NCBI GenBank assembly: GCA_001179505.1
Contig: CDMY01000086.1
Location: 131,520 to 195,519, forward strand
Length of the DNA: 64,000 nucleotides
From: Vitrella brassicaformis CCMP3155
Lineage: Eukaryota > Protista > Chromerida
Direction: 5' to 3'
A program made the position numbers and the translations under genes. Under the pieces are notes generated by a model that worked only from the letters and a program-made list of their open reading frames with translations, was not told the origin of the DNA and searched no databases. Below are positions 11,501 through 61,311 of this stretch, one piece after another (the first letter of the stretch is position 1; each line of letters opens with the position of its first letter).

Positions 11501-14500
11501 ACACGTCCCACCGGTGTCCGGTCAAACCAATGGGATGGGGCGCAGATTACACTCCGCAGCAGTTGGTCATGTACCTCTCTTGATGCCCACAGAAAACACG
11601 CCGCAAACCTTGCAAAATACAGAGAAGAAGAGGGAGGGTTGTAATGCGTGGGGGAAAAAAGTTTTGCCTGCAAACGCACCCGAAGATCCCAACAAAACTT
11701 GCCCCCAGCATAGATAGGGCAACACCGCAGTATATGAGCAGATAGAAGTACTGCATCCAGCCCCGCTGCTCGAACCAATGAAAACCCATGTAACGACCGA
11801 ATGGAGGTGCCCGGCCACTTGTCCAGAGCCCGACAACAAACTCGAGAAGGTTTGGACAGGAGGCTGCCATCCAAGATGAGCATAATACGATGAAGAGCAC
11901 ACCTAATATGTGGGACGTCCGAAAATACCTACGCACATTGAAATCAATAAATCACAGCGAGAACGGAACGTGTGGCAGATCGTTAACCTTACCACCAGTA
12001 AACTTCAAAACCCACAGACCTGAGGGAGGGTACAATGGGATATTAGAGGACCTTGCACGTGCAAGGAATCTCGTCTTACCCACGATGGCGTTCCTCTGGC
12101 TCGACGAGCCGAGCGCCTGCGTTGGTTTTGGTGTCCTGCTGTCGTTTGCCTCTGTGCCCCGGGGGAAAGGTTACCCTCACTTCTCCAGCATAAGCTTGTA
12201 CAGAGCCGACAGAGAAGTCTCTCGCTATGCGCGGCACGGATGGCGCTGCAACGAGAGTCATGCCACTGCTTTCGTTCTTCTTCGCCGGACCAGCGTACGC
12301 GGAAAGGCTTGGAAAGCTGTCAGGATCGGGGGAAACGGCGGAATTGTACGTTTGCATTCACTTGCCATGTGATACGCTTGCTGACCTGCCTCGCTTGATC
12401 AATGAGACACGAGGCAAATCAGGCCCTGAGAAATCGTAGAGCACCTCCGGAGTACCCCTTCTTTGCAGCTCATGGAAGCGTCCAGCGGCAGCCACCCTTC
12501 CAGCGCGCAATACGATGATCCTCGATATTGACGGGTCCGCGAGGAATGCACCGAGAGCGTGGGCAACCAGAACGCAGGTGCGGTGGCGTCCGGTCCTTCC
12601 TCCAGCTGCCGATGTGTGGTGGCCCCAGAGGATTCCATTGGGGAACTGGAAGACCGCCTGCCACACCTTCCTCGTCGTTGTCGCGTCCAGCGAAGCAAAA
12701 GGATCGTCAATGAGGAACAGCTGCTGTGAAATCTCGGTTCCTTGGTCTTCATTGGCAAGCGATGCAGCATACACAGCCCTTGCCAGACTGATCCTCGCCC
12801 GTTGGCCGCCGGACAAACTGTGCCCACCTCCCTCGATTTCGGTGAGGTCTCCAGCGACAAACTCGGCAAGGTCTTCGCGGAGACATACGGCATCAATGAT
12901 CTTCTCATAAGCCTCAGGATGCTGCACACGTGTACAGACACAGGCATGCACACTGAGAGATCCTAAACATTGGTTGAGCTGTGAGATCCCGCTGTTGGGC
13001 GGGATTGTGGCTTACGAAGGGACGACGGAAGATGATGTTCTCACGGATTGTGCCAGCAACGATCCACGGTGACTGCGGAGCGTACCCGACGCCACCCCCA
13101 CTGTGCCCACGAATGGTGACTGACGCACGACCTGGAGCAGCAAAGCAGAGGCGCTGAGACACGCTTTGCCCAGCCTCATCAACCAATGGTTCGGTTACCT
13201 TCAGCCAGATTCATTTCCCCAAGAAAAGAAGCTAACAGGCTAGACTTTCCTGCACCCGACGGGCCGAGGACCACGATCAGATCGCCCTCCATCACCCTCA
13301 TCCTGATCTCCCGCAACGCGAGCGATCCCGCAGTGTTCGCCCCCGTGGAGGCGTCCCTGGATGGTGGGCGCCAGCTGAAACTGGCATCTCTGAAGTCGAT
13401 CACCGGGTGTCTCTTAGCGGGGCGCGCTCGCTGTGTCCGCAAAGGTCCCACCGTAAGGTCCAAATCGCCTGTCGTAGCCGTCCGGGCCCGCGACGTCTGC
13501 GGCACCTGGACAGCATCCGTCACATGGCCCTCGTCGACATCGTAGAAGACGTCCTCCACAGCCGAAGAGACATCAGGTCTCTCCCCCTGACTGTAGACAC
13601 TAGAAGAACGCAGACGTGACGGATTAGAAAGTGAAACACGATCGGCAGGCGGGAGAGACTCAGTTGCCACAAGAGACGCCGAGCTCGACGTCAATCCACG
13701 GGGTCTCATCCGGCGCAGTGCTTCGGGCTCCGGCTCCGTGTCGTGCTCACACGCGGACTGGAAGCCATCGACATCACTCCCTCCCTCGCCGGGCCCTCCA
13801 CGGCCCTGACGTCCATCGGGCAGGTAGTACCCATCGCTAGACACCGGAGGCAATGATGGACTGGGCGTTGGCCTTTGTGGCAGCGATGGTGCACCCTGCC
13901 TGCCACCCGTGCCCGAGCGAGTGGAAGCGGGGGCCTCTACCCTGTCGTCCTGGAGGAGGAAGTCCGACAACCGCCGGATAGATACTTGAGCGATGATGAA
14001 GAGCTTCAGCACGCGAGGGATGTCATTTATCGCATTCAGGAAGCTACGGGAGGTACACAAGAAAGGCAGTAGCCAGCAATGCTTCCTCCGAGAGGTGTGT
14101 GCACATTCCCGTGTCTCCCGTTGGTCCCCGCCCCTGGCCCTACCGCTCGATGAATGCAAAGGTCGTGTATGTCGATGATGTGGACTGGAGGGAGCCGGAC
14201 TGCAGCACGATGGTGATGACGGTCGCCAGCTTGACCACCGCAGGGGTGCAGACAAACAGGAACTTGCTGCACGCGCTGAGGTAGGTCTGCGCTCCAAATC
14301 GGCGCAGTTCGTTTGAGCGCATTCGGTCGATGCGCTGGTAGGCGTGTTGTTCCCATGAGAGCATCTTGACGGTGCGGATGTTCTGGAGTATCTCCTTGGA
14401 GGCGCGCAGCCTGGCGTCTCTGAAGAGCATCATGCGTCGAATGAGGTGCTGGATGCGGGACAGGATGAGCCCGTTGACGGCGACCAGCAGCAGCACGACT

Positions 14501-15711
14501 GTGAGGACGATCCAGAAGGACGTCTGGTTGTTGAGCTCCCGGTAAAGGAAAGTGAAGTTGATCAGCACCTTGATAGGCTTGGACCACAACTCGTGGAAGT
14601 CATTGATTGCCTCGCCCACACGATGGGTGTCCACTGATATGAAGTCATTCAACTCTCCTGCGTAAGCAATACACATCGGACAGAAACACCTGTCACGCAC
14701 CTTGTCGACATGCCAACCCGCCCCCCTGTGTCTGTCTGACGGTCCACCCCGTTCTACTACCCAGCGAGGCCGCCTACCCCGCCCCAACCACCGACCTGAG
14801 CTGAGTGTCACCCGTGAGGCGGCAGCAACAGCCATGACCTCCACCTCAGTGTCCTCGTCGCTTTCGTGATGCTTGGAGCTCCTGGTTGTGTCGGTGAGGT
14901 TCTTGGTGATCGCTGGCCGACCTCCACTGCCTCCATCTGGGGGCGCCTCACGTGGCGGCAGCAGCGGTGTCGACTCCGTCACGTCACTCGCGTCGGCATC
15001 GGACAAGTCAGCGTTGCTCATCCTCCGACTGGACGAAGGTGGACCGCCACCACGAGTGGTCGTGTGGCCCTTGGGCGGGTGCTTGTCCGATTGATGACTG
15101 GCCGTGAGAGCTCCCCTCTGCATACTCCGTCGGAAGACAGCGCTGACAAGGGCTGACTTGGTGCGCAGGCCCACCCTCCTTGCCCCGAAGCGGAAGTGCT
15201 GTGTGCATAGGGCTCCGATGAGCTGTACAAAGACGATAGAGGCCCCGATGAGGACGCCGTCATTGAGGTCGCGTCCTGAGGGGTTCTCCATGTACTCGAT
15301 AAAGCGCTTCATGAGCAGGGGCTGCAGCGGGGTGAGGATCAGCTCCACCATCTTGAGAATGCCCAGCCAATAAAGGGGACTGAGCAGCGACCGATGCAGC
15401 GCCCGCAACAGAGACCGGTCCGCCTTGGTGTGCCCCATCACCTCCTCATCGAGGGCACTTGAGAACCTCTCACACGTCACCTCGGTCGCGTCATTCTGCC
15501 ACAGGGGCGGCACATCATCCGACGTGTACTGCCGCAAACCACCAATGCTCAGCAACCTGGTACACACACACACACACACACGCACGTGCCACAATGAGCA
15601 TTGCTCTGCAGAGAGCGAGCGTCCTTCATCTATCATGTGTTGACACGTGACATACCCGCCGACATGGCCGAAGGTGAGGAATGACAACCAGCCTGGTGGT
15701 CGTGTGCCCAT
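8513..15711 (-). CDS. ABCC: ABCC/MRP-type ABC transporter (TMD1-NBD1-TMD2-NBD2), multi-exon
   Basis: NBD1 has Walker A GPSGAGKSS, signature LSGGQRARISLARAVY and LIDDPFASLD. TMD2 has WFDRTPVGRVMNRLS. NBD2 has GRSGAGKTS, IAIVPQNPVLFSGSVRHNLDP, LSLGQKQLLC..ILLDEAS and DKTVVMITHRL. TGA at 8513-8515; ATG at 15711 (MGTRPPGWLSFLTF). Confidence 0.93.
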
Positions 15712-49433: not shown

Positions 49434-49576
49434 AGGGTTCAGGGTTTGAAGGGTTTGAAACCCTGAGCCCCAGAGCCTGAAACCTGAAACCCTAACCCCG
49501 CCACAAACCCTGAACCCTGAAACCCTAACCCCGCCACAAACCCTGAACCGTGAAACCCTAACCCCGCCACAAACCC
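49434..49576. repeat. Interstitial telomere-like repeat array with an orientation switch; 33-bp higher-order unit x ~3
   Basis: cagggttcagggtttgaagggtttg followed by aaaccctga...aaaccctaa. The unit cctgaaaccctaaccccgccacaaaccctgaac recurs with cctaacc at 49491, 49524 and 49557. Confidence 0.85.
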
Positions 49577-49594
49577 ATTCGCTTTCACAGAAGC

Positions 49595-49615
49595 ATGAGC
49601 GACCAGCACGTCTGA
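49595..49615 (+). promoter_or_regulatory. Candidate uORF (MSDQHV*) 38 nt upstream of the transporter start
   Basis: ATG AGC GAC CAG CAC GTC TGA, immediately after an acceptor-like ttcgctttcacag (49578-49590). Main ATG at 49654. Confidence 0.45.
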
Positions 49616-49653
49616 TCTGAGTCGAGGTGGCTGATCCCTGATCGCTTTTTCAT

Positions 49654-51909
49654 ATGGCATCTTCGGCTGCTGCGGCGCTGAGCGTGCTGTCATGCATCAG
49701 TGCATTCCTGCTGAGTGGTTTGGTCTTCGGCTGGCAGCCCATCCAGCTGCTGCTCATGCGAGAGGTCCATCAATCGCACGCGGGCCTGCAGGCAGATCGA
49801 TGGCTCTGATCGATGACAGTGTGTTTCTGTGTGTGTGCTGTGTGTCGGTGGGGTGCGTGCAGGGCGTGTACGAAGACCTGTGCGACGAAGGCGTCATGGG
49901 CTGTCCAGCGCAGCTCAGAAAGTAAGAGCAGCGACGCAATCATCACTCAGACACCAAGGCCCTGCCGAGTGTTTTCGTTTCCTTTCAGGCTGTCGGAGAT
50001 CTTCACTCTGGCTTCCTTTCTTGTCAGCCTGATTGCCTTGCCGGCGGGTCTGTTTCTGGATCGGTTTGGTCCCAGGCCCACGGTGGCCCTCAGCGGTGTC
50101 CTCATCATCGGGGGGCTGGTCCTCTTCGGTATCAGCGACTCGCAGCTGGACATGTTTTCCCTTGGCTATGCGCTGATGGGCGTCGGTGGCGTGCTGACCC
50201 AGTTCGCGGCCTTTCCTGTCAGTTTCCTTATCCCCGCCTATCAGTCACTCATTCTCGCAGGTGAGATATAGGCTGACGGAGGCGCAGTGCAGTGCACTCA
50301 GCACAGACACATGCAATGCAGCGGAGGAATGGTGTGCTCCTTTCCTGGCTGATCCCAGGAATCAACTGTTGCTTCGATGCGTCGTGCCTGGTGAGAGATC
50401 TACTGACTATAGGATCCGTGGGCACACACACATTGCAAGCAGCCGCATCCGCTCTCTCCCTGTCGTATGCATGGATGCAGGTGTTCCAGGTCTTCTTGAG
50501 CCTGCACGAGTGGACGGGCCTTCCCCGGAGAGTCATGTTCTTGAGCTACAGCGTCATCGCCTTCGCCATCCTCGCCCCGATTATCGTGCTCTGGACGCTG
50601 GTCGACCGCGCCAAATCCAGCAGCACCAGCGGCGGCAAGCTCAAAGTGGAAGACGAGCTCAACGGCTATGTGGCGTTGGGCGACACTGAAGCGGTACTGC
50701 TGGCCTACGATGTGCAGCATGAGATGCAGCAGCTGCACTCGGCCAAGGATGAGGAAGACCTCTCCGGCATGACGCTATACCAACAGTGAGCAAAGCAGGG
50801 ATGGTAGTGAGATAGCGATGCGGTAGATGTCTTGTGTTGTCGATTCAGGTTTTGCAGCAGCGCGTTTTGGACGATTCTCGTTTACACGTGTCTGGGCATG
50901 CTGCGGACATCCCTCTACATCGCCTGTGTGGGCATAGTGCTCAACACATACGGCGATGCGGCGGGGGGCTACGTGTACATCAATCTCTTCGGCGTGCTGC
51001 TGCCCCTGGGCGTCTTCCTCGCTCCCGTCATCGGCTGGACTGTCGACTCCATCGGCTGTCTCAACACTCTTCAGCTGACTAATGCGCTGAGCGTTCTCAA
51101 CTATGGCCTCAGTCTCGTCCCCTCGCTGCAAGTGCAAGCCGCCAACTTCATCGTCTTCACCACTTACAGGGCTTTCTTGTACGCCATGACGGCCACATTC
51201 AACGCGAAGGTGAGCGCCTGGGTGGCTGAGTGGCTGAGTGGCTGACGGACTGACCCTGGCTGCCTTTTTTGTTGTGATGTGCAGACGTTTGGTTTGGCGA
51301 CGATGGGGCGTGTGATGGGTGTGTGCAACTGTGTGTCGGCCTTCACGATCCTTATCCAGCCCTACTTCATCTCAATGATCTTCAGCACCTTCAATGGACA
51401 GATCTTCGTCCCCTTCATGACCATCGTCATGGCAGGGGTCGCACTCGCCCTCGTCAACGAGGCATACAGATGGCATGTGCGCAGGTCAGCCACTCAGCCA
51501 GCAAGCCACTCACAAACAATTCATGGACATCCGACGTTGACACGTCTGTCTCTCCATTCCTTCGTTCAGTAAGCGACGCGGTCTGCGGGCGGCATCGCCG
51601 GGCGACAATCCTGTGTCGCTGGTGGCGCCGAGCCACATGGGAGTCGACGAGAGTGCCCTGCACCCACCACACGATGAGATGCTCGGATACCTTGGCAGAT
51701 TCACGTGCAAGCGCACATCGAGCGGCTTCGACGAAGTGCCGTGGCACGACGGCGCCATGTCGATTGAGAGGCGGCTGAGCGTCACCTCCCCGATGGCACA
51801 CTCGGTGAGGGCGAGGGGGCGGGGCAGCGAAGACTACACGTCTGACGTGGCTGTGAGGAGCGATGGGGAGACGGCAATGAGCACTGCTGCCAACACTGTG
51901 GTGATGTAG
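49654..51909 (+). CDS. MFS transporter, SLC43/LAT3 (FMP42/ApiAT-related) amino-acid transporter family
   Basis: SGLVFGWQPIQLLLMRE|GVYEDLC, IFTLASFLVSLIALPAGLFLDRFGPR, FWTILVY, FTTYRAFLYA..FNAK|TFGLATMGRVMG. About 12 TM segments; TAG at 51907-51909. Confidence 0.85.
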
Positions 51910-53605: not shown

Positions 53606-54763
53606 TCACTGCTGCTTACAGCTGTCGGGATCCCCCGTGTGGTCCCTCGGCTGCCTTGCTGCCGCACCCTCACCCCCACTGTGCACGTACCCGCCGCCCT
53701 CCGCCCCTTCATGTGCCTCACTGGCGGCATCCTCGTTGACACCCAGCGCCTCTATGAGGCTCTGCACCTCGCTGTCGTGCACGTCGCCCTGCGCCAGCTT
53801 GCTCAGCACCGACGGCGTCAGCCGGCTGCTCTCCAAAGCTGAGCCGTCAAACCCAAAGAACCGTAGGAACTCCGCAAACCCCCGGGCATCTTCCTCTGTG
53901 AAGTTTGAAGGCTGGCTGCTGTGTGTGGATGGCCTGTGCGCCGCTGTAGGGTGCGGCTGGTGTGGGTGCGGGTGAGAGAGGTGGTCGAGAGCACCTGGCC
54001 CGCCGAGGTCTCGCATCACCTCCTCAGGTGGCTTGCCGAACTCCTGCAGCTGCACCAGCAGCTCCTGGATCCTCAGAGTCGTGGGCGAGGGGTCGGTCGA
54101 TGAAGCTCCCGTGGTGCTGGTGGCCTTGCTCTCCTGTTCCTCCTGGTCGAAGAGGGCCACCACCTGCCGATAGATGGACACCTGCCGCTCGTAACGCCCC
54201 AGGTCCTCCTCAGATATCACTTGGTCGTCCGACCCGCCCTCGTCCCTCTTTTGCCTCTGGGCATCCAGCCATGGCTCGAATCGCGACAAGACCTGCCGCA
54301 TGGGCTCATGCAGCACATCACGCGAGAATACGCCCTCCAGCAGCTCGTCCAATGCCTTCTCGAAATCGCCATCATTCAGCAGCCCGCCCCCCGACAGTGG
54401 CACGTCTGCTGCCGACTCTGGCCTCCTCTCCTCCTTGTCGAGCTGCTCCAGCTCCGCCTTCATGTGACCGAGCGCCGACTCGATGTTGGCAGCGATGCCG
54501 CTGCTGGCGGTATTACCGCTGCTGGGTGGGGGATCAGCACGCGGTGGCCGGTAGGGTGAGGAGGGGGCTGGCGACGTGCGGGCTGCTGACTCGTTGACGC
54601 GTGGCGGTGGTGTGGCAGCTGCGGGAGGGGGGGAAGAGGGGGAAGGTGGCTGCTTGGGAGGTGCGCTTGACGCCGATGCGGCTGAAGGTGGTGCATCTTG
54701 CTGCGGCCTTGGCTGTGCTGCGTCCGAGAGTTCCTCGAGGGTCTCCTTCAGAAGGTCATCCAT
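53606..54763 (-). CDS. PEX19: Peroxin 19 (peroxisomal membrane protein chaperone/import receptor), apparently intronless
   Basis: N-terminal MDDLLKETLEEL. Core LDELLEGVFSRDVLHEPMRQVLSRFEPWL..EEDLGRYERQ..IQELLVQLQEFGKPPEEVM. C-terminal CaaX CKQQ*. Confidence 0.9.
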   Translation of the reverse strand: MDDLLKETLEELSDAAQPRPQQDAPPSAASASSAPPKQPPSPSSPPPAAATPPPRVNESAARTSPAPSSPYRPPRADPPPSSGNTASSGIAANIESALGHMKAELEQLDKEERRPESAADVPLSGGGLLNDGDFEKALDELLEGVFSRDVLHEPMRQVLSRFEPWLDAQRQKRDEGGSDDQVISEEDLGRYERQVSIYRQVVALFDQEEQESKATSTTGASSTDPSPTTLRIQELLVQLQEFGKPPEEVMRDLGGPGALDHLSHPHPHQPHPTAAHRPSTHSSQPSNFTEEDARGFAEFLRFFGFDGSALESSRLTPSVLSKLAQGDVHDSEVQSLIEALGVNEDAASEAHEGAEGGGYVHSGGEGAAARQPRDHTGDPDSCKQQ

Positions 54764-54907
54764 GACGATGCAGACGACACCGTAGCGCAGCAATGATCAA
54801 AACCTTCCGCTCGTGCCTTCGTGGAAGGCGAGCCAAGGAGAGGCTGCGAGCTCAAATTGCAGATCTGCCGGATCTACGCAGGCCATGCGAGGGCCTGGCG
54901 AGGGGAG

Positions 54908-57900
54908 ATGACGCAGGTCTTTCCTTGGCTGATTCTATTTTTCTCACTCAACATCTCAGCAGCTTTCAGGACAACAAGACACGGTGCCTTTCGCCACATG
55001 GAGGCGGCATTCACCCCGCCGCACAGCAGCGTCGTGTGCGGGAACATGCGGCCAACAAGATCCTCTGCTGCACTGCGTGCAAAGCGCCAGGGTGGACCCG
55101 CACCTGTGGAGCACAAGAGGCGGAGCGGGCAGAAGGGGGGCAACAAGCCGCAGACCAGTGCATCTCGGGCCAAGGAGGAGACTGGGGTGTTCACTTCTGA
55201 CGAAATGCGCGATTTGAAAGACCTCCAGGCATGCAACGAGAGCACAGTGCGCAGGAGGCCGGACGGGATGATTGGTTCCGTTCTGTGTGTGTCCTGACTG
55301 CTTCAGGGTTCTCCCTCTCTGTGGGAAGCGACCCTTGAGGCGCGCAAGCAGTACCCACAGGTCGGCATGCACGGCACAAGACACTGTTAATGATCAAAGT
55401 CAGACCGTATGTGCGGTTGGTTTGTTGATCCATCAGCTGCCGCGTGAGGCAGCATTGCGCGAGTACCTCAAGGCAAGCAGGCCCACACAGCCGCCACAGG
55501 CACACGACGAAGTACCCGCCGTAACGCCCGTCAAGCGGCGAAGGAGAACCCCCAAGACACAGCAGCCCAGGCCGCTTCCTGCAGCAGCTGCAGCCACCAA
55601 CCAGACGGCGGACCATTTGCATCTGCCGCTTGCTGCAAGGGAGAGGCCATCTGTAGCGGCTGGTGCTGTGGCAGCTGGCGAGCCCCCCGTGTCATCCTCA
55701 CGTAATGGCAGCGATGTCTATCAGCAGCTCAATGTAGCTGACGGGTCGGTGTACATCCCGGGGCTCTCAGCACCCGACGGACAGGTACTGTCGAACACTC
55801 ACAGACAATGCCATCCGTCTATCGTCCTGTCGACCATCCTCTCCCCCTTTGCGTGTGTGCGTGCAGGTGCCGTCGAGCACATCGTTATCCTGGGCGAGAG
55901 CCCCAGCGTCTGCCGGCAGCGGGGCCGCTGCTCTCCCCGTCCTTCGTCAACAGATTCCATCCTCCCCCCTGGCCCCTCCCATCAACACCACATGGGAGGC
56001 GGGCGCCACGCTGGCCACCATAATGGCACAGGGGTTCAAGACCATCACTGGGGGCGGCGACTTCGCCCGCCTCTACGCTTCCCTCGCCAACCTGCGGGCA
56101 CTCACGAAAGAACAGACGCCGGTAGGAAGCCGCTCTGCCCACACACATGCAAAGATCCATGTGTGTGCATCCGTGTGTGTCCTCGGTGTTCTCATGCAGA
56201 TGTATGGCCGCTACGCGGATCTGAGGGGCCTGGTGGTCCGTCTCAATCAGACGGTCCGTGACCGCAAGGTCCGCTACTCGCGGGAGGCCCTCGAGCGCCG
56301 ACTGGCTTCCATCACATTGCCTGGCCTGAACGACGACTATGGCAGCAGCCTTGTAGGCCAGGAAGACCACAGCCAGAACCCGCTGGCCGCCGTGTCTGAG
56401 TGGCTGGAGGCCCTGCTGCGGCAGGAGGGGCCTACTGGGGCTGTCGAAGCCAACGTGACGCGGGCACTGCGTCTGCTGAATCGGCTGACGCCCCCTGAGC
56501 CGTCGGTGGGCGAGGCGGAACTGGTGCTGGAGGCCCTCGACGACATCACACACGCCGACAACGTCACGGTCCTCCGGGCCATGGCGGCACACTGGGGCAT
56601 TGACAGTGGCGAGAGGGACGTGTGGGAGCTGATTGGTGACCCGCAGTTGAGATCCCGTCTGTGCGCCCCCCTCACGCCAGGCACACGGGACATTATCTCG
56701 GTCGTGGCGGACACACTGCAGCAGCTGGAGCCGGCGAGGGGGCTTGTCATCCCCCCTGAGATGGGCGACAACATGACGGAGAGCGAGGCGCTGCGGCTGG
56801 TGACTGAGGGCGGTACCTACACCGACACGTCTGGCCGCACCATCACCCTCAAGCCACTGCGGGACCTCAGCAGCAAGAGGCGGCGGCAGCGGCTGCTGCG
56901 CTATGGCCTCACGCACACACACGTAGAGGCGCGTGACGCCGATGACAGCACTGCGGAAGAGCTGGACAGTGACAGTGACGAGGAGATTGACAACAGCAGC
57001 AGCTCGGATGAGACGACAGCGAGGCGACGGGCGTCACCGCAAGAGGCCCGCGCCATGGACAGATACATTCGGTGAGAGGGCGAGCGCTCACACGCCCCAC
57101 AGGTCTGTCAGATGACGGATATTTGCTTGTGTGTGTGTGTGTCAGGCTGGCCACGGTTGTTGACTTCCTGCACCCCCTGCTGATGCAGTGGATCGCCGAG
57201 ACCGCCGCCTCCATCAGTGCCGATGGCGCCACACACGGCAACTTGCGCAACAGGAGTTTCCGAAGGTCACTCGAGAAGGCCCTGCAGCAGCGACAGGGCG
57301 GCCGGCTGGCCGACTACCTCAAGGTCATCGAACGAGGGGGCCAGGAGGCCATCGACCGATTCCTCCAGTGAGCATGCAGAGAGACAGCACAGACAGACAC
57401 GCAGCAGCACACGACGCAGGCCAGATTAGATACGCAGTTTTTCGTGTTGGCTGCAGGGATGGGTTGAAGACCCTATTCTACCAAGTGAACCGGATCGTCC
57501 GTGTGAGCGGCCCCCTTGACACAGATGCTATCACACGGAGGGGCGAACTGCTCATGGTGGGTGGGTGAGGTGACTGACCTGACTGACACCCACATTGCTC
57601 TCTGCATGCTTCTGTCTGATCTGATTGTCTGTCTGTCTGTCTGTGTGCAGGAGGGATACGTGTTGCTGCAGCACATGGTTCGGGAGTACTCGTACCGTCA
57701 GGTGTGGACCTTCCAGTCCTACCTCGGCCTCCGCATGTTCGAGCGCCGCATCGTCGAGATGGGCTTCAACCTCTCACGCAAAATGATCCACGTCAGGGTA
57801 CGGATTTCTATGGGTGTGAGGGAGTGGGGGGAGAGACGCCTCTGCCTGCCTGCCTGCCACTGCAAACAAAGTGACCTGGTACGGTGTGCCCGTGTCTGTC

Positions 57901-59005
57901 TGTTGTGCTGTGTGCAGTCTGGTGAGAGCCGGCGCATCAACGCCCTCTACGGCAAGATGGTCGAATACGAAGCACAGGTCAGTCAAGCCGGGCACAGGCA
58001 CTCACAGCAGAGGCAGCCAGTAAGCCGTGTATGTGTGTTGGTCGGTTGGTCGATTCGTTCAGTTTGGCCGCCCGCCGATGGCCGACGAGTTGGCATCGTT
58101 GCTGGGGTGGTCGGTGGCCGAGGTCAACCGGGTCACGCAACTCAGACACAGACTCAAAAATGTAACCACAGACCACAGGCACAGACATACACCACACCCA
58201 GCCCGCCCTTAGATGGCACCTCGCGTCTCTGTCTGTCTGTCTGTCTGTCTGTCTGTCATGTGTGTGTGTGCAGATGCAGTCCCTTGAGGAGAAGAGCAGC
58301 ATGTTTGGTGGCGGGGATGACGGCATCGGCGCCCCCGGCCCCACAGGCAGCTCAATCGACGTCGTGCCTGACGCACGGCTGGGCGAGTCTCAAGACGACC
58401 TGCACCACAGCGACAAACACAAGGACGCCGCAAGCGCCATGAGAGAGAGCTTCCGGCGTGCTGCCGAGCAGCAGGAGTACAGGCGGCTGCTGTCAGAGTG
58501 GCGGGTGGCATTTGCTGATGTCATGGACACGGCACAGATGGCCGACCCACTCAGCCGCGAGGCCATCGCGGCATACCTCTCCCACTCTGCAGCCACCGAC
58601 AAACAGAAAGAGGTCAGTGAGCCGCCTGAAACCTCTCTTGTCTATCTGAGTGTGTGTGTGTGTGTGTCTGTGTGTGTATAGGTGCTGGAGCGCCATTACG
58701 GTCTGGGTGGCTCTCAGCGGCCGATGACGATATCAGAGATCGCCCGTCTGTTTGGACGGCACCACGCCGCCATCCAGAAGCACATCAAGAAGGGCACCGA
58801 CGCCATACTCGACTTCGTCCTGCACCGACAGCCGTCCTTCTTCGCCTTTGTGGACGAGAGCGCCCTGCATGGTCCGGACGGCCATGTGGATGACATCGGG
58901 GCGTCGGTCATCTACAACGCGCATGTCAGGAGGGCGTCGCTGCTGGTCCAAGAGACCAATGAGACAAAGCTGAGAGACCAGCAGAGGGCTGTGGTGCTGA
59001 CCTGA
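54908..59005 (+). CDS. Nucleus-encoded, plastid-targeted sigma-70-family transcription initiation factor (divergent), multi-exon
   Basis: Signal peptide MTQVFPWLILFFSLNISA|AF plus R/S/T-rich transit-like segment. Region 2-like ELLM|EGYVLLQHMVREYSYRQVWTFQSYL..SRKMIHVR; region 3 AQ|FGRPPMADELASLLGWSVAEVNRV..QSLEE; region 4 DKQKE|VLERHYGLGGSQRPMTISEIARLFGRHHAAIQKHIKKG. Confidence 0.8.
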
Positions 59006-59460
59006 GTGACGGGCCAGGTTGTGTCAGTGCATTGGTTGTGGGTGCATTGTGCCACGCAATGCAATGCGTTTGTCGTATGCATGCGCGTCAGTCAGGCCTT
59101 TTGTTTGTACAGAGTCAGCGGACGGAAGGGACGTACGGACGAGGAGCTAGCCATGTGGGTGTATCATGAACAGACGGATGGATGGACGCAGTTTGGCCGA
59201 TTGCGGCATGTGCATTGAGATAGTGCACCGTGTCAATAACATGATAGTCACACAAGGGGCGCACACAAAGAAGAAAGCGAGACGCGAAGGTAAGCTGGCG
59301 GGACGGAAAAATCTTGACCTAACCGTTCGGCCCTCACGAGTCTAGAATCGGGGGTAGATTCGATGCACAGCTTTATTCGATCCCCACTTTAGGAGCAATC
59401 ATCCCGTGTCTCTTCCTTTACGCAGCAAACACAGATTCATTCATTCATTCAGTCAGTAAG

Positions 59461-61311
59461 TTAGAGGCACCCCCTTCTATGCAGACGCCCTGCCCGCACG
59501 GCAATTGGCGGCACAGCTTCGAAGACGGGCATATCCATCGCCGGCTCGTCGGTGTACCACCTCTCGAGCCCATCTCTCTCGAATATGCGCAGCTCCTGCG
59601 AGACACGAGCCACAAGTGACACAGAGAACACCCACGAGTATGTCTCCCTCTCTGTCACCCACCCACCTGTTCGACGGTCGGAATCATCACGAAGGGCTCC
59701 TGTTGCCAGGGGCCCCAAGGGAAAGGAGGACGGAACCACTCCATACCAGGGAGCCCCTGCCATGACGCCCCGGGGAAGGGGGGCGGCCCCTGCAGGCTGC
59801 GCGGCTGAAGATAACCCGGAAATCGAGGGCGTCCACGTGGCTCGTACGGTGACCTGGTGACGGCCACGTATGGGTCTCCTAGCTGCTCTGCCGTCGGTTC
59901 CTTGGTCTTTTCCTTGCCCTTTTTGGGTCCGCAGATTGGGCTGCAGGGGCTGCAACGACAGCTTGTAGCAGGTTTCTCACGGGGCTCCGGCTCTGGGGAG
60001 ACGCGGGGCGGTGCGAATGGCAAGCGCATGACGGGCTCGGCTCGCCATTGGGCGTATCGTTCCGGTTCCAGGAAGGCCAGCTCGTCTTCGTTGTAGAGCT
60101 CGGCATAGATGGTGTCTGCTGTGTGTGCATACACTCGGCCGGTCGCTGGGTCGGTGTATTCGGCGAAGGGCAAAAAGGTGGGCGGGCCGGGCAGCGGCTT
60201 CTCGAGCACTGGGTCCCTGCTCCTTGTGGGGTAGTGCGCCTGCCGGCTGTACCCGAATGTGTACTCGGTCGCCGACGGATTCGTGGCAAAATTCATCGCA
60301 AAAAGCTGAGTCGCGCAACTGAAGTGAGACACAAGCGACCACCAGCCTCAGAGGCCTTACTGTCTGGTGGAGATCCCGTCCTCGTTACCTCTGCTGCTGT
60401 GTCTTCGTTGGAGGAAGGAATATCACACGATCAAAGCCATATATGCCGCCATCTTGACCGTCAGGGAATCCCAGATCTCCTTCACCACCATCGACATCAG
60501 CTGGCATCATTGCGCTGCTTCTGTCTGTCGTCTCCGATGCAAAAGCAGCAGCCCCTTCGCAGCTCTGGGCATCGATATGCTCACTCCTCGATGACAGGGG
60601 CTCAGCTACGGGGCCTGACACATTCCAGGGCGGTAAGGAAATGACGAGACAGGCGACACAAGGATGACTATGCCTTTTGCCGACCAGCTGCGCCGGGCTG
60701 CTCGTGTGCTGGTGTCCACACTGGGGGCACTCGGAGATCTGTGGACACCTAACAAGAAAGGATGGCATGCACGAGAACTTGGCGGCGTCCCAGAGTGACG
60801 TCAGATGTCTGCTCACGATATAGTCAGGTTCTGTGATCAGAAGGAGCGGGAAGAGCAAACGAATTGAGGTGATGCCTGTTCCACAATCGAATGTGGCCTA
60901 CCCGAGCGCTCAGCTTGCGGCCCAACATAGGTGTGCTTGGACGTGTACTGCACACACATCGATGTGGTGGGGTGGTATGTGGGAAGCTCCGTTCCTCGCC
61001 CATCACCCTACCTTGCTCTTCTTGGAGTCCCCCCCCGTGGCGGCAGAGGAAGACGAGCTGCAGAACTCGGGCAGGGGAACCTTGGGTGCATCAGGAGGCT
61101 CCTCCCCCACTTCATGTGGCAGACCTGCATGGGGGACAAAAGTCGCAGTGGAAAGGCTGTTGGGGCGGAGCTCTTGCAGCCTACCTCTGTCCATGCCGGG
61201 GAGGGCAATATTTGGGAGGGCCTCGGAGGGGATTGAAGGGAGAGAATTGCCCCTCGGGGCCGGAAACCGTTTCACGGAGCTCTTGGCTTGCAGACCTGCT
61301 TTTCTTGGCAT
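59461..61311 (-). CDS. Hypothetical Pro-rich protein (multi-exon)
   Basis: ATG at 61311 (MPRKAGLQAKSSVKR). Exons join in phase through EPDYIVSRHLTSLWDAAKF and QQ|SCATQLFAMNFATNP to ..ELRIFERDGLERWYTDEPAMD..RRGCL* (stop at 59461). Confidence 0.55.

What the first reader, a model, noticed from the sequence alone, without database searches (positions are those of the whole stretch)
54908..59005. Divergent nucleus-encoded sigma-70 factor with bipartite plastid-targeting leader
No single ORF shows this; it appears only after splicing. The N-terminus is a signal peptide followed by AF and an Arg/Ser/Thr-rich stretch, the pattern used for import into complex red-derived plastids. The C-terminal third shows sigma-70 regions 2, 3 and 4 in order with plausible spacing: E-G-x-x-x-L, SRKMIHVR (cf. 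SRTIRLP), FGRPP..DELA..LG.S...V..SLEE, and KQKEVLERHYGL..MTISEIARLFG. Plastid-encoded RNA polymerases need a nuclear sigma factor, so this is a candidate promoter-specificity factor for this organism's plastid. The several hundred residues between leader and core match nothing I recognise.
Basis: partly seen in the sequence, partly recalled or inferred. Interest (0 to 1): 0.88.

Follow-up and report, generated by a model that had tools for sequence, protein, structure and literature searches.

The report
Hidden divergent plastid sigma factor gene
A twelve-exon, expressed nuclear gene of this alga encodes a 1046-residue protein that starts with a likely chloroplast address tag and ends in a very diverged copy of the bacterial sigma factor that tells RNA polymerase where to start, so it is probably an extra regulator of chloroplast transcription, a known kind of protein in an unusually diverged form.

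Summary
RNA contigs from two public runs confirm a 12-exon gene from ATG 54908 to TGA 59003-59005, encoding 1046 aa. The one surprise is that intron 1 is GC-AG.

No unspliced ORF looks like a sigma factor, but the spliced protein does. A broad sigma-70 profile I built from 25 bacterial sigma factors scores 30.2 bits (E 1.5e-11). The best of 3000 whole-protein shuffles scores 7.8 bits. hhalign gives 95% probability, with regions 2.1 to 4.2 colinear over aa 682-998. One 33-aa exon alone hits Pfam Sigma70_r3 (E 9e-4, below Pfam's cut-off).

The domain is very diverged. E. coli RpoD alone gives 3.5 bits. The Trp pair of region 2.3 and the residues that read the -10 and -35 elements are replaced.

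The N-terminus has a hydrophobic signal-peptide-like start, then Ala-Ala-Phe, then a basic, Ser/Thr-rich, acid-poor stretch. This is the complex-plastid pattern, but no predictor was run and localisation is untested.

Residues 242-616 have no relatives among 1.84 billion representative proteins.

Verdict: a new, diverged member of the nuclear-encoded plastid sigma factors. Sigma function is inferred, not shown. Earlier scan notes report two other diverged sigma-like genes elsewhere in this genome. Interest is moderate.

The parts
54885..54911 (+). 8-codon upstream ORF in the 5' UTR. Its TGA overlaps the main ATG.
   Evidence: it lies inside the RNA contig that starts at 54867
54908..55228 (+). 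Exon 1 (aa 1-107). Signal-peptide-like aa 1-18 (54908-54961), Ala-Ala-Phe at aa 18-20, and a transit-peptide-like basic Ser/Thr-rich stretch to about aa 90-100.
55229..55306 (+). Intron 1, 78 nt, GC..AG.
   Evidence: joint 55225>55304, shift +3
55307..55360 (+). Exon 2 (aa 108-125).
55437..55784 (+). Exon 3 (aa 126-241). Pro/Ala-rich, with a basic run KRRRR at aa 158.
55867..56121 (+). Exon 4 (aa 242-326), part of the orphan region.
56200..57071 (+). Exon 5 (aa 327-617). Orphan region predicted helical at low confidence. It ends in an acidic Ser-rich stretch at about aa 570-600.
57146..57367 (+). Exon 6 (aa 617-691). Its last residues, from aa 682 (57339), begin the match to sigma region 2.1.
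57457..57556 (+). Exon 7 (aa 691-724): region 2.1 and the start of 2.2.
57651..57797 (+). Exon 8 (aa 725-773): regions 2.2-2.4. Aromatic residues Y737, Y739, W743, F745 and Y748 are kept; the Trp pair is lost.
57918..57977 (+). Exon 9 (aa 774-793): region 3.0.
58063..58161 (+). Exon 10 (aa 794-826): region 3.1 helix-turn-helix.
   Evidence: Pfam Sigma70_r3, E 8.9e-4, 19.8 bits
58274..58612 (+). Exon 11 (aa 827-939): a region 3.2-like IDVVPD motif, an extra acidic/His-rich linker (about aa 851-915), and the first helix of region 4.1.
58682..59005 (+). Exon 12 (aa 940-1046 plus the stop): region 4.1-4.2 helix-turn-helix (to about aa 998, 58858), then a 48-aa tail.
   Evidence: HTH_38 E 7.6e-4; Sigma70_r4_2 E 0.089

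Best explanation
This is an expressed nuclear gene for a very diverged sigma-70-family protein with a two-part leader for a complex, red-derived plastid. The host is a chromerid-type alga; earlier scan notes name it Vitrella brassicaformis, which I did not verify.

Proposed course:
1. The hydrophobic N-terminus takes the nascent protein into the ER.
2. After cleavage near Ala-Ala-Phe, the basic Ser/Thr-rich stretch carries it across the inner plastid membranes.
3. In the stroma, the C-terminal third (aa 682-998, regions 2.1 to 4.2) binds the bacterial-type plastid RNA polymerase core and directs it to a subset of start sites.

The Trp pair of region 2.3 and the residues that read the -10 and -35 elements in canonical sigma factors are replaced. 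Any promoter it reads should therefore differ from the bacterial consensus.

The roughly 570 residues between leader and core are lineage-specific. They are most likely regulatory, and they end in an acidic Ser-rich stretch just before the core.

Shown here: the gene model, its expression, the homology to sigma-70 regions 2-4, and the composition of the leader. Inferred: import, core binding and promoter selection.
For: - Gene model and expression: spliced RNA contigs in runs X6 and X7 at word depths of 38.6 and 141, giving a 1046-aa ORF.
- Homology by hmmsearch: my 25-sequence sigma-70 profile of regions 2-4 gives 30.2 bits, E 1.5e-11. It finds two colinear domains, aa 722-836 against profile positions 32-141 and aa 879-964 against positions 132-208.
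- Controls for that score: 3000 whole-protein shuffles reach at most 7.8 bits, C-terminal shuffles at most 10.7, and the reversed sequence 1.1.
- Homology by hhalign: probability 95%, E 3.5e-8, with the whole profile (1-241) aligned to aa 682-998. A second profile gives 95.6%.
- Curated model: exon 10 alone hits Pfam Sigma70_r3 at E 8.9e-4.
- Single sequence: phmmer with E. coli RpoD aligns RpoD 403-499 to aa 721-819.
- Leader: the h-region has Kyte-Doolittle hydropathy 2.3. Residues 19-90 have net charge +12, 12 Ser/Thr and 3 acidic residues. No other hydrophobic segment exists in the protein.
- Literature on targeting: chromerid plastid proteins carry Phe just after the signal cleavage site, less strictly in Vitrella (PMC6668581).
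[quoted passage not shown] A sigma-family protein has no other known partner in the cell.
Against: - No curated model reaches its cut-off on any single exon. Sigma70_r3 gives 19.8 bits against 25.3, and Sigma70_r4_2 gives 12.9 against 25.7. Exon 8 alone gives no Sigma70_r2 hit. NCBIfam finds nothing.
- The whole spliced protein could not be given to Pfam, PDB or AlphaFold, because no contiguous reference exists.
- E. coli residues W433, W434, Q437, T440, H455 and E458 align with replaced residues. So do R584, E585, R588 and Q589 (read from the alignment).
- Region 1.2 is not supported.
- SignalP and ASAFind were not run, and the n-region has no basic residue.
- Two basic runs (KRRRR at aa 158, KRRRQR at aa 552) look like nuclear localisation signals.
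- No orthologue was found, so conservation cannot be judged.
Confidence: 0.6

Rival explanations
1. It is a sigma-derived protein that has lost promoter opening. It still reaches the plastid and may still bind the polymerase core or DNA. There it would act as a regulator or decoy that competes with the canonical sigma factor, or as a nucleoid protein, and not as an initiation factor.
For: The Trp pair of region 2.3 and the polar residues that read -10 and extended -10 are replaced, and the -35-reading residues differ (alignment). Similarity to any single sigma factor is very low. There is a large orphan N-terminal part. A more canonical sigma factor, findable by BLAST with E. coli sigma-70, is already reported for Vitrella (CEL93836, PMC10334805).
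Against: Order, spacing and the hydrophobic cores of regions 2.1-4.2 are kept over 317 residues. Five aromatic positions of region 2 are kept. The gene is well expressed. From general knowledge, ECF-type sigma factors also lack the Trp pair and still initiate.
Confidence: 0.22
2. The protein does not go to the plastid stroma. The hydrophobic start would be a plain secretory or ER signal or an anchor. Alternatively, translation starts at a later Met and the basic runs send the protein to the nucleus, where the sigma-like helix-turn-helix domains have a different DNA-binding role.
For: No targeting predictor was run. Phe sits at +1 or +2 depending on the cleavage site, and Phe is only loosely conserved in Vitrella (PMC6668581). 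There are NLS-like runs at aa 158 and 552, and internal Met residues at aa 31 and 47.
Against: The first in-frame ATG of the transcript is 54908, and the hydrophobic segment follows it directly. The next 70 residues have transit-peptide composition. No non-plastid partner for a sigma-70 domain is known in eukaryotes.
Confidence: 0.12
3. The sigma resemblance is chance similarity of helical, HTH-containing sequence, and the protein is an unrelated orphan.
For: Single-exon and single-sequence searches are weak.
Against: The profile score of 30.2 bits compares with at most 10.7 bits in 6000 shuffles. The hhalign E-value is 3.5e-8, with all regions colinear. An independent curated Pfam model hits exon 10. 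Four of the nine best-scoring of 844 window segments belong to this gene.
Confidence: 0.03

Closest known systems
ApSigma (PF3D7_0621000) of Plasmodium falciparum and its reported Vitrella brassicaformis homologue CEL93836 (PMC10334805)
   Same: A nuclear-encoded sigma-70-type protein of the apicomplexan/chromerid plastid lineage. [quoted passage not shown]
   Different: Those proteins were found by BLAST with the E. coli sigma-70 conserved domain, and their regions 2 and 4 are described as highly conserved. This protein scores only 3.5 bits against E. coli RpoD, so it is most likely a separate and much more diverged gene. I could not fetch CEL93836 to compare the two.
Nuclear-encoded plastid sigma factors of plants and algae (SIG1-SIG6 type)
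   Same: The architecture matches: a targeting leader, a variable N-terminal part, then regions 2, 3 and 4. The presumed role matches too: giving promoter choice to the plastid-encoded polymerase.
   Different: This one has a two-part (ER plus transit) leader instead of a simple transit peptide, and a much longer orphan part (about 570 aa). It has lost the Trp pair and the canonical -10/-35-reading residues, and has an extra linker of roughly 60 aa between regions 3 and 4.
Bacterial group 1/2 sigma-70 factors (RpoD/SigA/SigB)
   Same: Colinear homology from region 2.1 to 4.2 (hhalign 95%). The best subgroup profile is a mixed set of group 1/2 sigma factors (20.4 bits).
   Different: About 18% identity. 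There is no supported region 1.2 and no clear cyanobacterial affinity at this resolution. The gene is eukaryotic, with 11 introns.

Membership tests
Sigma-70 family (Pfam Sigma70_r2/r3/r4) | Region 2 (core binding and -10 recognition), recognisable by profile | tested here: met
   My broad profile gives domain 1 over aa 722-836 at 18.5 bits, E 5.7e-8. hhalign aligns regions 2.1-2.4 to aa 682-770. Pfam's own Sigma70_r2 model gave no hit on exon 8 alone. It could not be run on the spliced domain.
Sigma-70 family (Pfam Sigma70_r2/r3/r4) | Region 3 helix-turn-helix | tested here: inconclusive
   Pfam Sigma70_r3 on the 33-aa exon 10 gives E 8.9e-4 and 19.8 bits, below the 25.3 cut-off. This is the strongest part of the local profile match.
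Sigma-70 family (Pfam Sigma70_r2/r3/r4) | Region 4 helix-turn-helix | tested here: inconclusive
   Local profile domain 2 covers aa 879-964 at 9.5 bits, E 3.3e-5. Pfam Sigma70_r4_2 gives 12.9 bits, E 0.089, and HTH_38 gives E 7.6e-4 on exon 12. The AF2 model of exon 12 has pLDDT 54, too low to use.
Sigma-70 family (Pfam Sigma70_r2/r3/r4) | Regions in the order 2-3-4 with family-like spacing | tested here: met
   One colinear hhalign alignment places profile 1-241 on aa 682-998. The only large insertion lies between regions 3.2 and 4.1.
Sigma-70 family (Pfam Sigma70_r2/r3/r4) | Group 1-type promoter-melting and promoter-reading residues (E. coli Y430, W433, W434, Q437, T440; R584, E585, R588) | tested here: not met
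   Y430, F427, Y425 (as Trp), F419 (as Tyr) and Y421 are kept. W433, W434, Q437, T440, H455 and E458 are replaced. R584, E585, R588 and Q589 align with H, A, Q and K (alignment). This excludes a canonical group 1 reading of promoters, not family membership.
Sigma-70 family (Pfam Sigma70_r2/r3/r4) | Binds the RNA polymerase core and confers promoter-specific initiation | not testable with these tools
   Needs biochemistry or ChIP.
Bipartite targeting signal of red-derived complex plastids | N-terminal ER signal peptide | tested here: inconclusive
   Residues 4-14 have hydropathy 2.3, followed by N-I-S-A, which fits the -3/-1 rule. No trained predictor was available.
Bipartite targeting signal of red-derived complex plastids | Phe (or Trp/Tyr/Leu) at the first position after the signal cleavage site | tested here: inconclusive
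   The sequence ISA-AF puts Phe at +2, or at +1 if cleavage follows the second Ala. The motif is known in chromerids but is looser in Vitrella (PMC6668581).
Bipartite targeting signal of red-derived complex plastids | Transit-peptide-like stretch: basic, hydroxylated, poor in acidic residues | tested here: met
   Residues 19-90 have 15 Lys/Arg, 3 Asp/Glu and 12 Ser/Thr, for a net charge of +12.
Bipartite targeting signal of red-derived complex plastids | Directs a reporter into the plastid | not testable with these tools
   Needs a GFP fusion or immunolocalisation.

The most novel reading that the evidence does not exclude
This alga carries several cryptic, fast-evolving sigma-like proteins, each with its own orphan N-terminal domain: this gene plus the two noted elsewhere in the genome by this scan. 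They would divide plastid transcription between gene classes, for example the photosynthesis transcripts that receive poly-U tails versus the rest. This member, lacking the Trp pair, would open or select promoters in a way not seen in bacterial sigma factors, or would act as a polymerase-binding decoy.
Probability: 0.2. Interest if true: 0.7.

Novelty: new member of a known kind. Interest (0 to 1): 0.42.

Why it matters
How plastid and apicoplast transcription starts in the apicomplexan/chromerid lineage is poorly understood. No clear promoters are known, transcripts are polycistronic, and a sigma factor was identified only in 2023, with one homologue reported in Vitrella (PMC5404108, PMC10334805).

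A second, expressed sigma-like gene that ordinary similarity searches do not find suggests the sigma repertoire of chromerids is larger than reported. It gives a concrete candidate for differential control of plastid genes.

It also shows that such genes are invisible to ORF-based or single-sequence searches. They need spliced models and broad profiles. The kind of protein itself is well known, so the advance is incremental.

Tried and rejected
**Searches and models that gave nothing**
- Exons 4-5 (402 aa by reference) against 1.84 billion representative proteins: 0 hits.
- ESM Atlas with exon 5: best score 0.52, nothing usable.
- AlphaFold2 single-sequence models of exon 5 (pLDDT 44) and exon 12 (pLDDT 54): too poor for fold searches, so none were run.
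- phmmer of exon 8 against PDB: only a chance hit at E 0.28.
- NCBIfam on five exon pieces: nothing relevant.
- A narrow profile of 77 proteobacterial RpoD sequences: -1 bit. This shows that breadth of the profile is what matters.
- Region 1.2: not supported.
- Group-specific profiles: no assignment to a cyanobacterial origin.

**Attempts to obtain a contiguous, spliced reference of the protein, so the remote tools could take it**
- The look-up of encoding contigs on the neighbouring Pex19 protein gave only genomic contigs and a Pex19 transcript.
- The search for related loci and an exact 24-mer search in metagenome contigs found nothing.
- Exact look-up of seven candidate fragment products found none.
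- A search with the downstream ORF found nothing.

Because of this I did not run Pfam, PDB or structure prediction on the whole protein. I also did not type the sequence in.

**By-eye errors and artefacts**
- My first guess for the end of exon 1 (55274 or 55279) was wrong. RNA shows 55228 with a GC donor.
- I treated the odd joint 57861>59168 (20-nt side, 191 letters between) as a repeat artefact.

**Not verified**
- The organism name. It rests on earlier scan notes and on a GC content of about 58%, which is close to the 59.6% reported for Vitrella plastid-reference transcripts (PMC6668581).
Full report
**Gene model.** The region 54908-59005 on the + strand holds no long ORF, only open stretches in shifting frames bounded by GT..AG sites. 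I laid the contigs of four public runs on 54600-59400. Two of them carry one spliced contig across the whole gene: X6 record 15 (4960 nt) and X7 record 17 (4725 nt). X1 carries fragments.

Eight introns appear as explicit joints. The other three (57557-57650, 58162-58273, 58613-58681) follow from the record coordinates of neighbouring pieces, because their joints were dropped at microsatellites. Ten introns are GT..AG. Intron 1 (55229-55306) is GC..AG, which I had not guessed by eye.

The exons are 54908-55228, 55307-55360, 55437-55784, 55867-56121, 56200-57071, 57146-57367, 57457-57556, 57651-57797, 57918-57977, 58063-58161, 58274-58612 and 58682-59005. Joined, they give 3141 nt and a 1046-aa protein without internal stops.

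The X6 contig starts at 54867. The first in-frame ATG is 54908, and an 8-codon upstream ORF (54885-54911) overlaps it.

**Is the C-terminal third a sigma factor?** The remote tools take no sequence read through a stop, and I found no contiguous reference for the spliced protein. I therefore searched the exons separately.
- Exon 10 (33 aa) hits Pfam Sigma70_r3 at E 8.9e-4 (19.8 bits, cut-off 25.3).
- Exon 12 hits several HTH models (HTH_38 at E 7.6e-4) and Sigma70_r4_2 weakly (E 0.089).
- Exon 8 alone hits nothing. NCBIfam and PDB sequence searches with exons were blank.

I then tested the spliced protein locally. E. coli RpoD (L001) aligns its residues 403-499 to aa 721-819, but at only 3.5 bits. 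A profile of 77 proteobacterial RpoD sequences gives -1 bit.

I built a broad profile of regions 2-4 from 20 sigma factors of groups 1-3. They come from cyanobacteria, Firmicutes, Actinobacteria, Deinococcus and Proteobacteria (plasmid records), plus five RpoD sequences.
- The profile scores 30.2 bits, E 1.5e-11, with two colinear domains: aa 722-836 for regions 2.2-3.1 and aa 879-964 for regions 3.2-4.2.
- Three thousand shuffles of the whole protein reach at most 7.8 bits. Three thousand shuffles of the C-terminal part reach 10.7, and the reversed sequence 1.1.
- hhalign aligns the whole profile (columns 1-241) to aa 682-998 with probability 95% and E 3.5e-8. A second profile gives 95.6%.
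- Against 844 stop-free segments of the window, the same profile gives at most 10.8 bits. Four of the nine best segments are pieces of this gene.

**How diverged is it?** Identity to the profile is about 18%. In region 2 the aromatic positions F419, Y421, Y425, F427 and Y430 of E. coli sigma-70 are kept as Y, Y, W, F and Y. W433 and W434 and the polar residues Q437, T440, H455 and E458 are replaced.

In region 4.2 the positions of R584, E585, R588 and Q589 align with H, A, Q and K (read from the alignment). Region 1.2 is not supported. An extra acidic, His-rich linker of about 60 residues lies between regions 3.2 and 4.1.

Profiles of single sigma groups do not place it. A mixed group 1/2 profile scores best (20.4 bits) and cyanobacterial sequences score 7.7.

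**The leader.** Residues 4-14 are strongly hydrophobic (hydropathy 2.3). They are followed by N-I-S-A, then A-F. Residues 19-90 carry 15 Lys/Arg, 3 Asp/Glu and 12 Ser/Thr. The protein has no other hydrophobic segment.

This matches the two-part signal of red-derived complex plastids. For chromerids a Phe just after the signal cleavage site is documented, less strictly in Vitrella (PMC6668581; PMC8233740). I could run no trained predictor, so the leader is consistent with plastid import, not proven. Two basic runs (aa 158 and 552) resemble nuclear localisation signals and keep a small rival alive.

**The middle.** Exons 4-5 (aa 242-616) find nothing among 1.84 billion representative proteins and nothing in the ESM Atlas. 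A single-sequence AlphaFold model is helical but has low confidence (pLDDT 44). This part ends in an acidic Ser-rich stretch (about aa 570-600) just before the sigma core. I treat the region as lineage-specific and probably regulatory, which is inference only.

**Context.** Earlier notes of this scan name the genome Vitrella brassicaformis and report two other diverged sigma-like genes on other pieces (s1-212000, s1-218422). I did not verify the name or see those sequences. Window GC of about 58% is close to the published 59.6% for Vitrella plastid-reference transcripts (PMC6668581).

In chromerids and apicomplexans the bacterial-type polymerase is the only plastid RNA polymerase (PMC5404108). 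A nuclear sigma factor, ApSigma, was characterised in Plasmodium in 2023. One Vitrella homologue (CEL93836) was found by BLAST with E. coli sigma-70 (PMC10334805). The protein here scores far too low against E. coli sigma-70 to be found that way. It is therefore most likely a different, additional gene, though I could not fetch CEL93836 to check.

**Verdict.** This is a spliced, expressed nuclear gene for a very diverged sigma-70-family protein with a leader of the complex-plastid type.

The most likely mechanism is import into the plastid, binding of the plastid polymerase core through regions 2 and 4, and selection of non-consensus start sites (confidence about 0.6). The main rival is a sigma-derived regulator that no longer opens promoters (about 0.2).

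It is a new member of a well-known kind. It is moderately interesting because it enlarges a poorly known sigma repertoire in the lineage leading to apicoplasts.

Noticed in passing
window 53606-54837 (- strand) and 54867 onward (+ strand): A Pex19 gene (Pfam PF04614, E 4e-22) lies head to head with the sigma-like gene. A JGI transcript contig of Pex19 (L104) reaches 54837, and the sigma transcript contig starts at 54867. The known 5' ends are therefore at most about 30 nt apart, which suggests a shared bidirectional promoter.
   Followed up: partly
window 54885-54911: An 8-codon upstream ORF lies in the 5' UTR. Its TGA overlaps the main ATG (the sequence reads AGATGA), an arrangement typical of termination-reinitiation coupling.
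   Followed up: no
window 55229-55306: Intron 1 uses a GC donor (GC..AG). The other ten introns are GT..AG.
   Followed up: yes
window 57618-57650, 58220-58273, 58640-58681, 57125-57145: Several introns end in (TG)n or (CTGT)n microsatellites just before the AG, instead of a plain pyrimidine tract. RNA contig joints were dropped at these repeats, and many unrelated contigs share them.
   Followed up: no
window about 49576-51567 (- strand); locus L104 2929-4578: A spliced gene for an MFS_1 transporter (549 aa, seven or more introns by alignment of L104 to the window) is convergent with Pex19. One JGI transcript contig joins the two genes.
   Followed up: partly
window 59006-60800: The RNA contigs of the sigma gene run more than 1.3 kb beyond 59400. 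This is either a long 3' UTR or overlap with a convergent transcript. The 225-aa ORF at 59655-60332 (-) has no relatives in the protein collection.
   Followed up: partly
window 13179-15711 (- strand): ORFs with ABC_membrane (E 1.4e-16) and ABC_tran (E 2.6e-6) domains, which look like exons of one ABC transporter gene.
   Followed up: no
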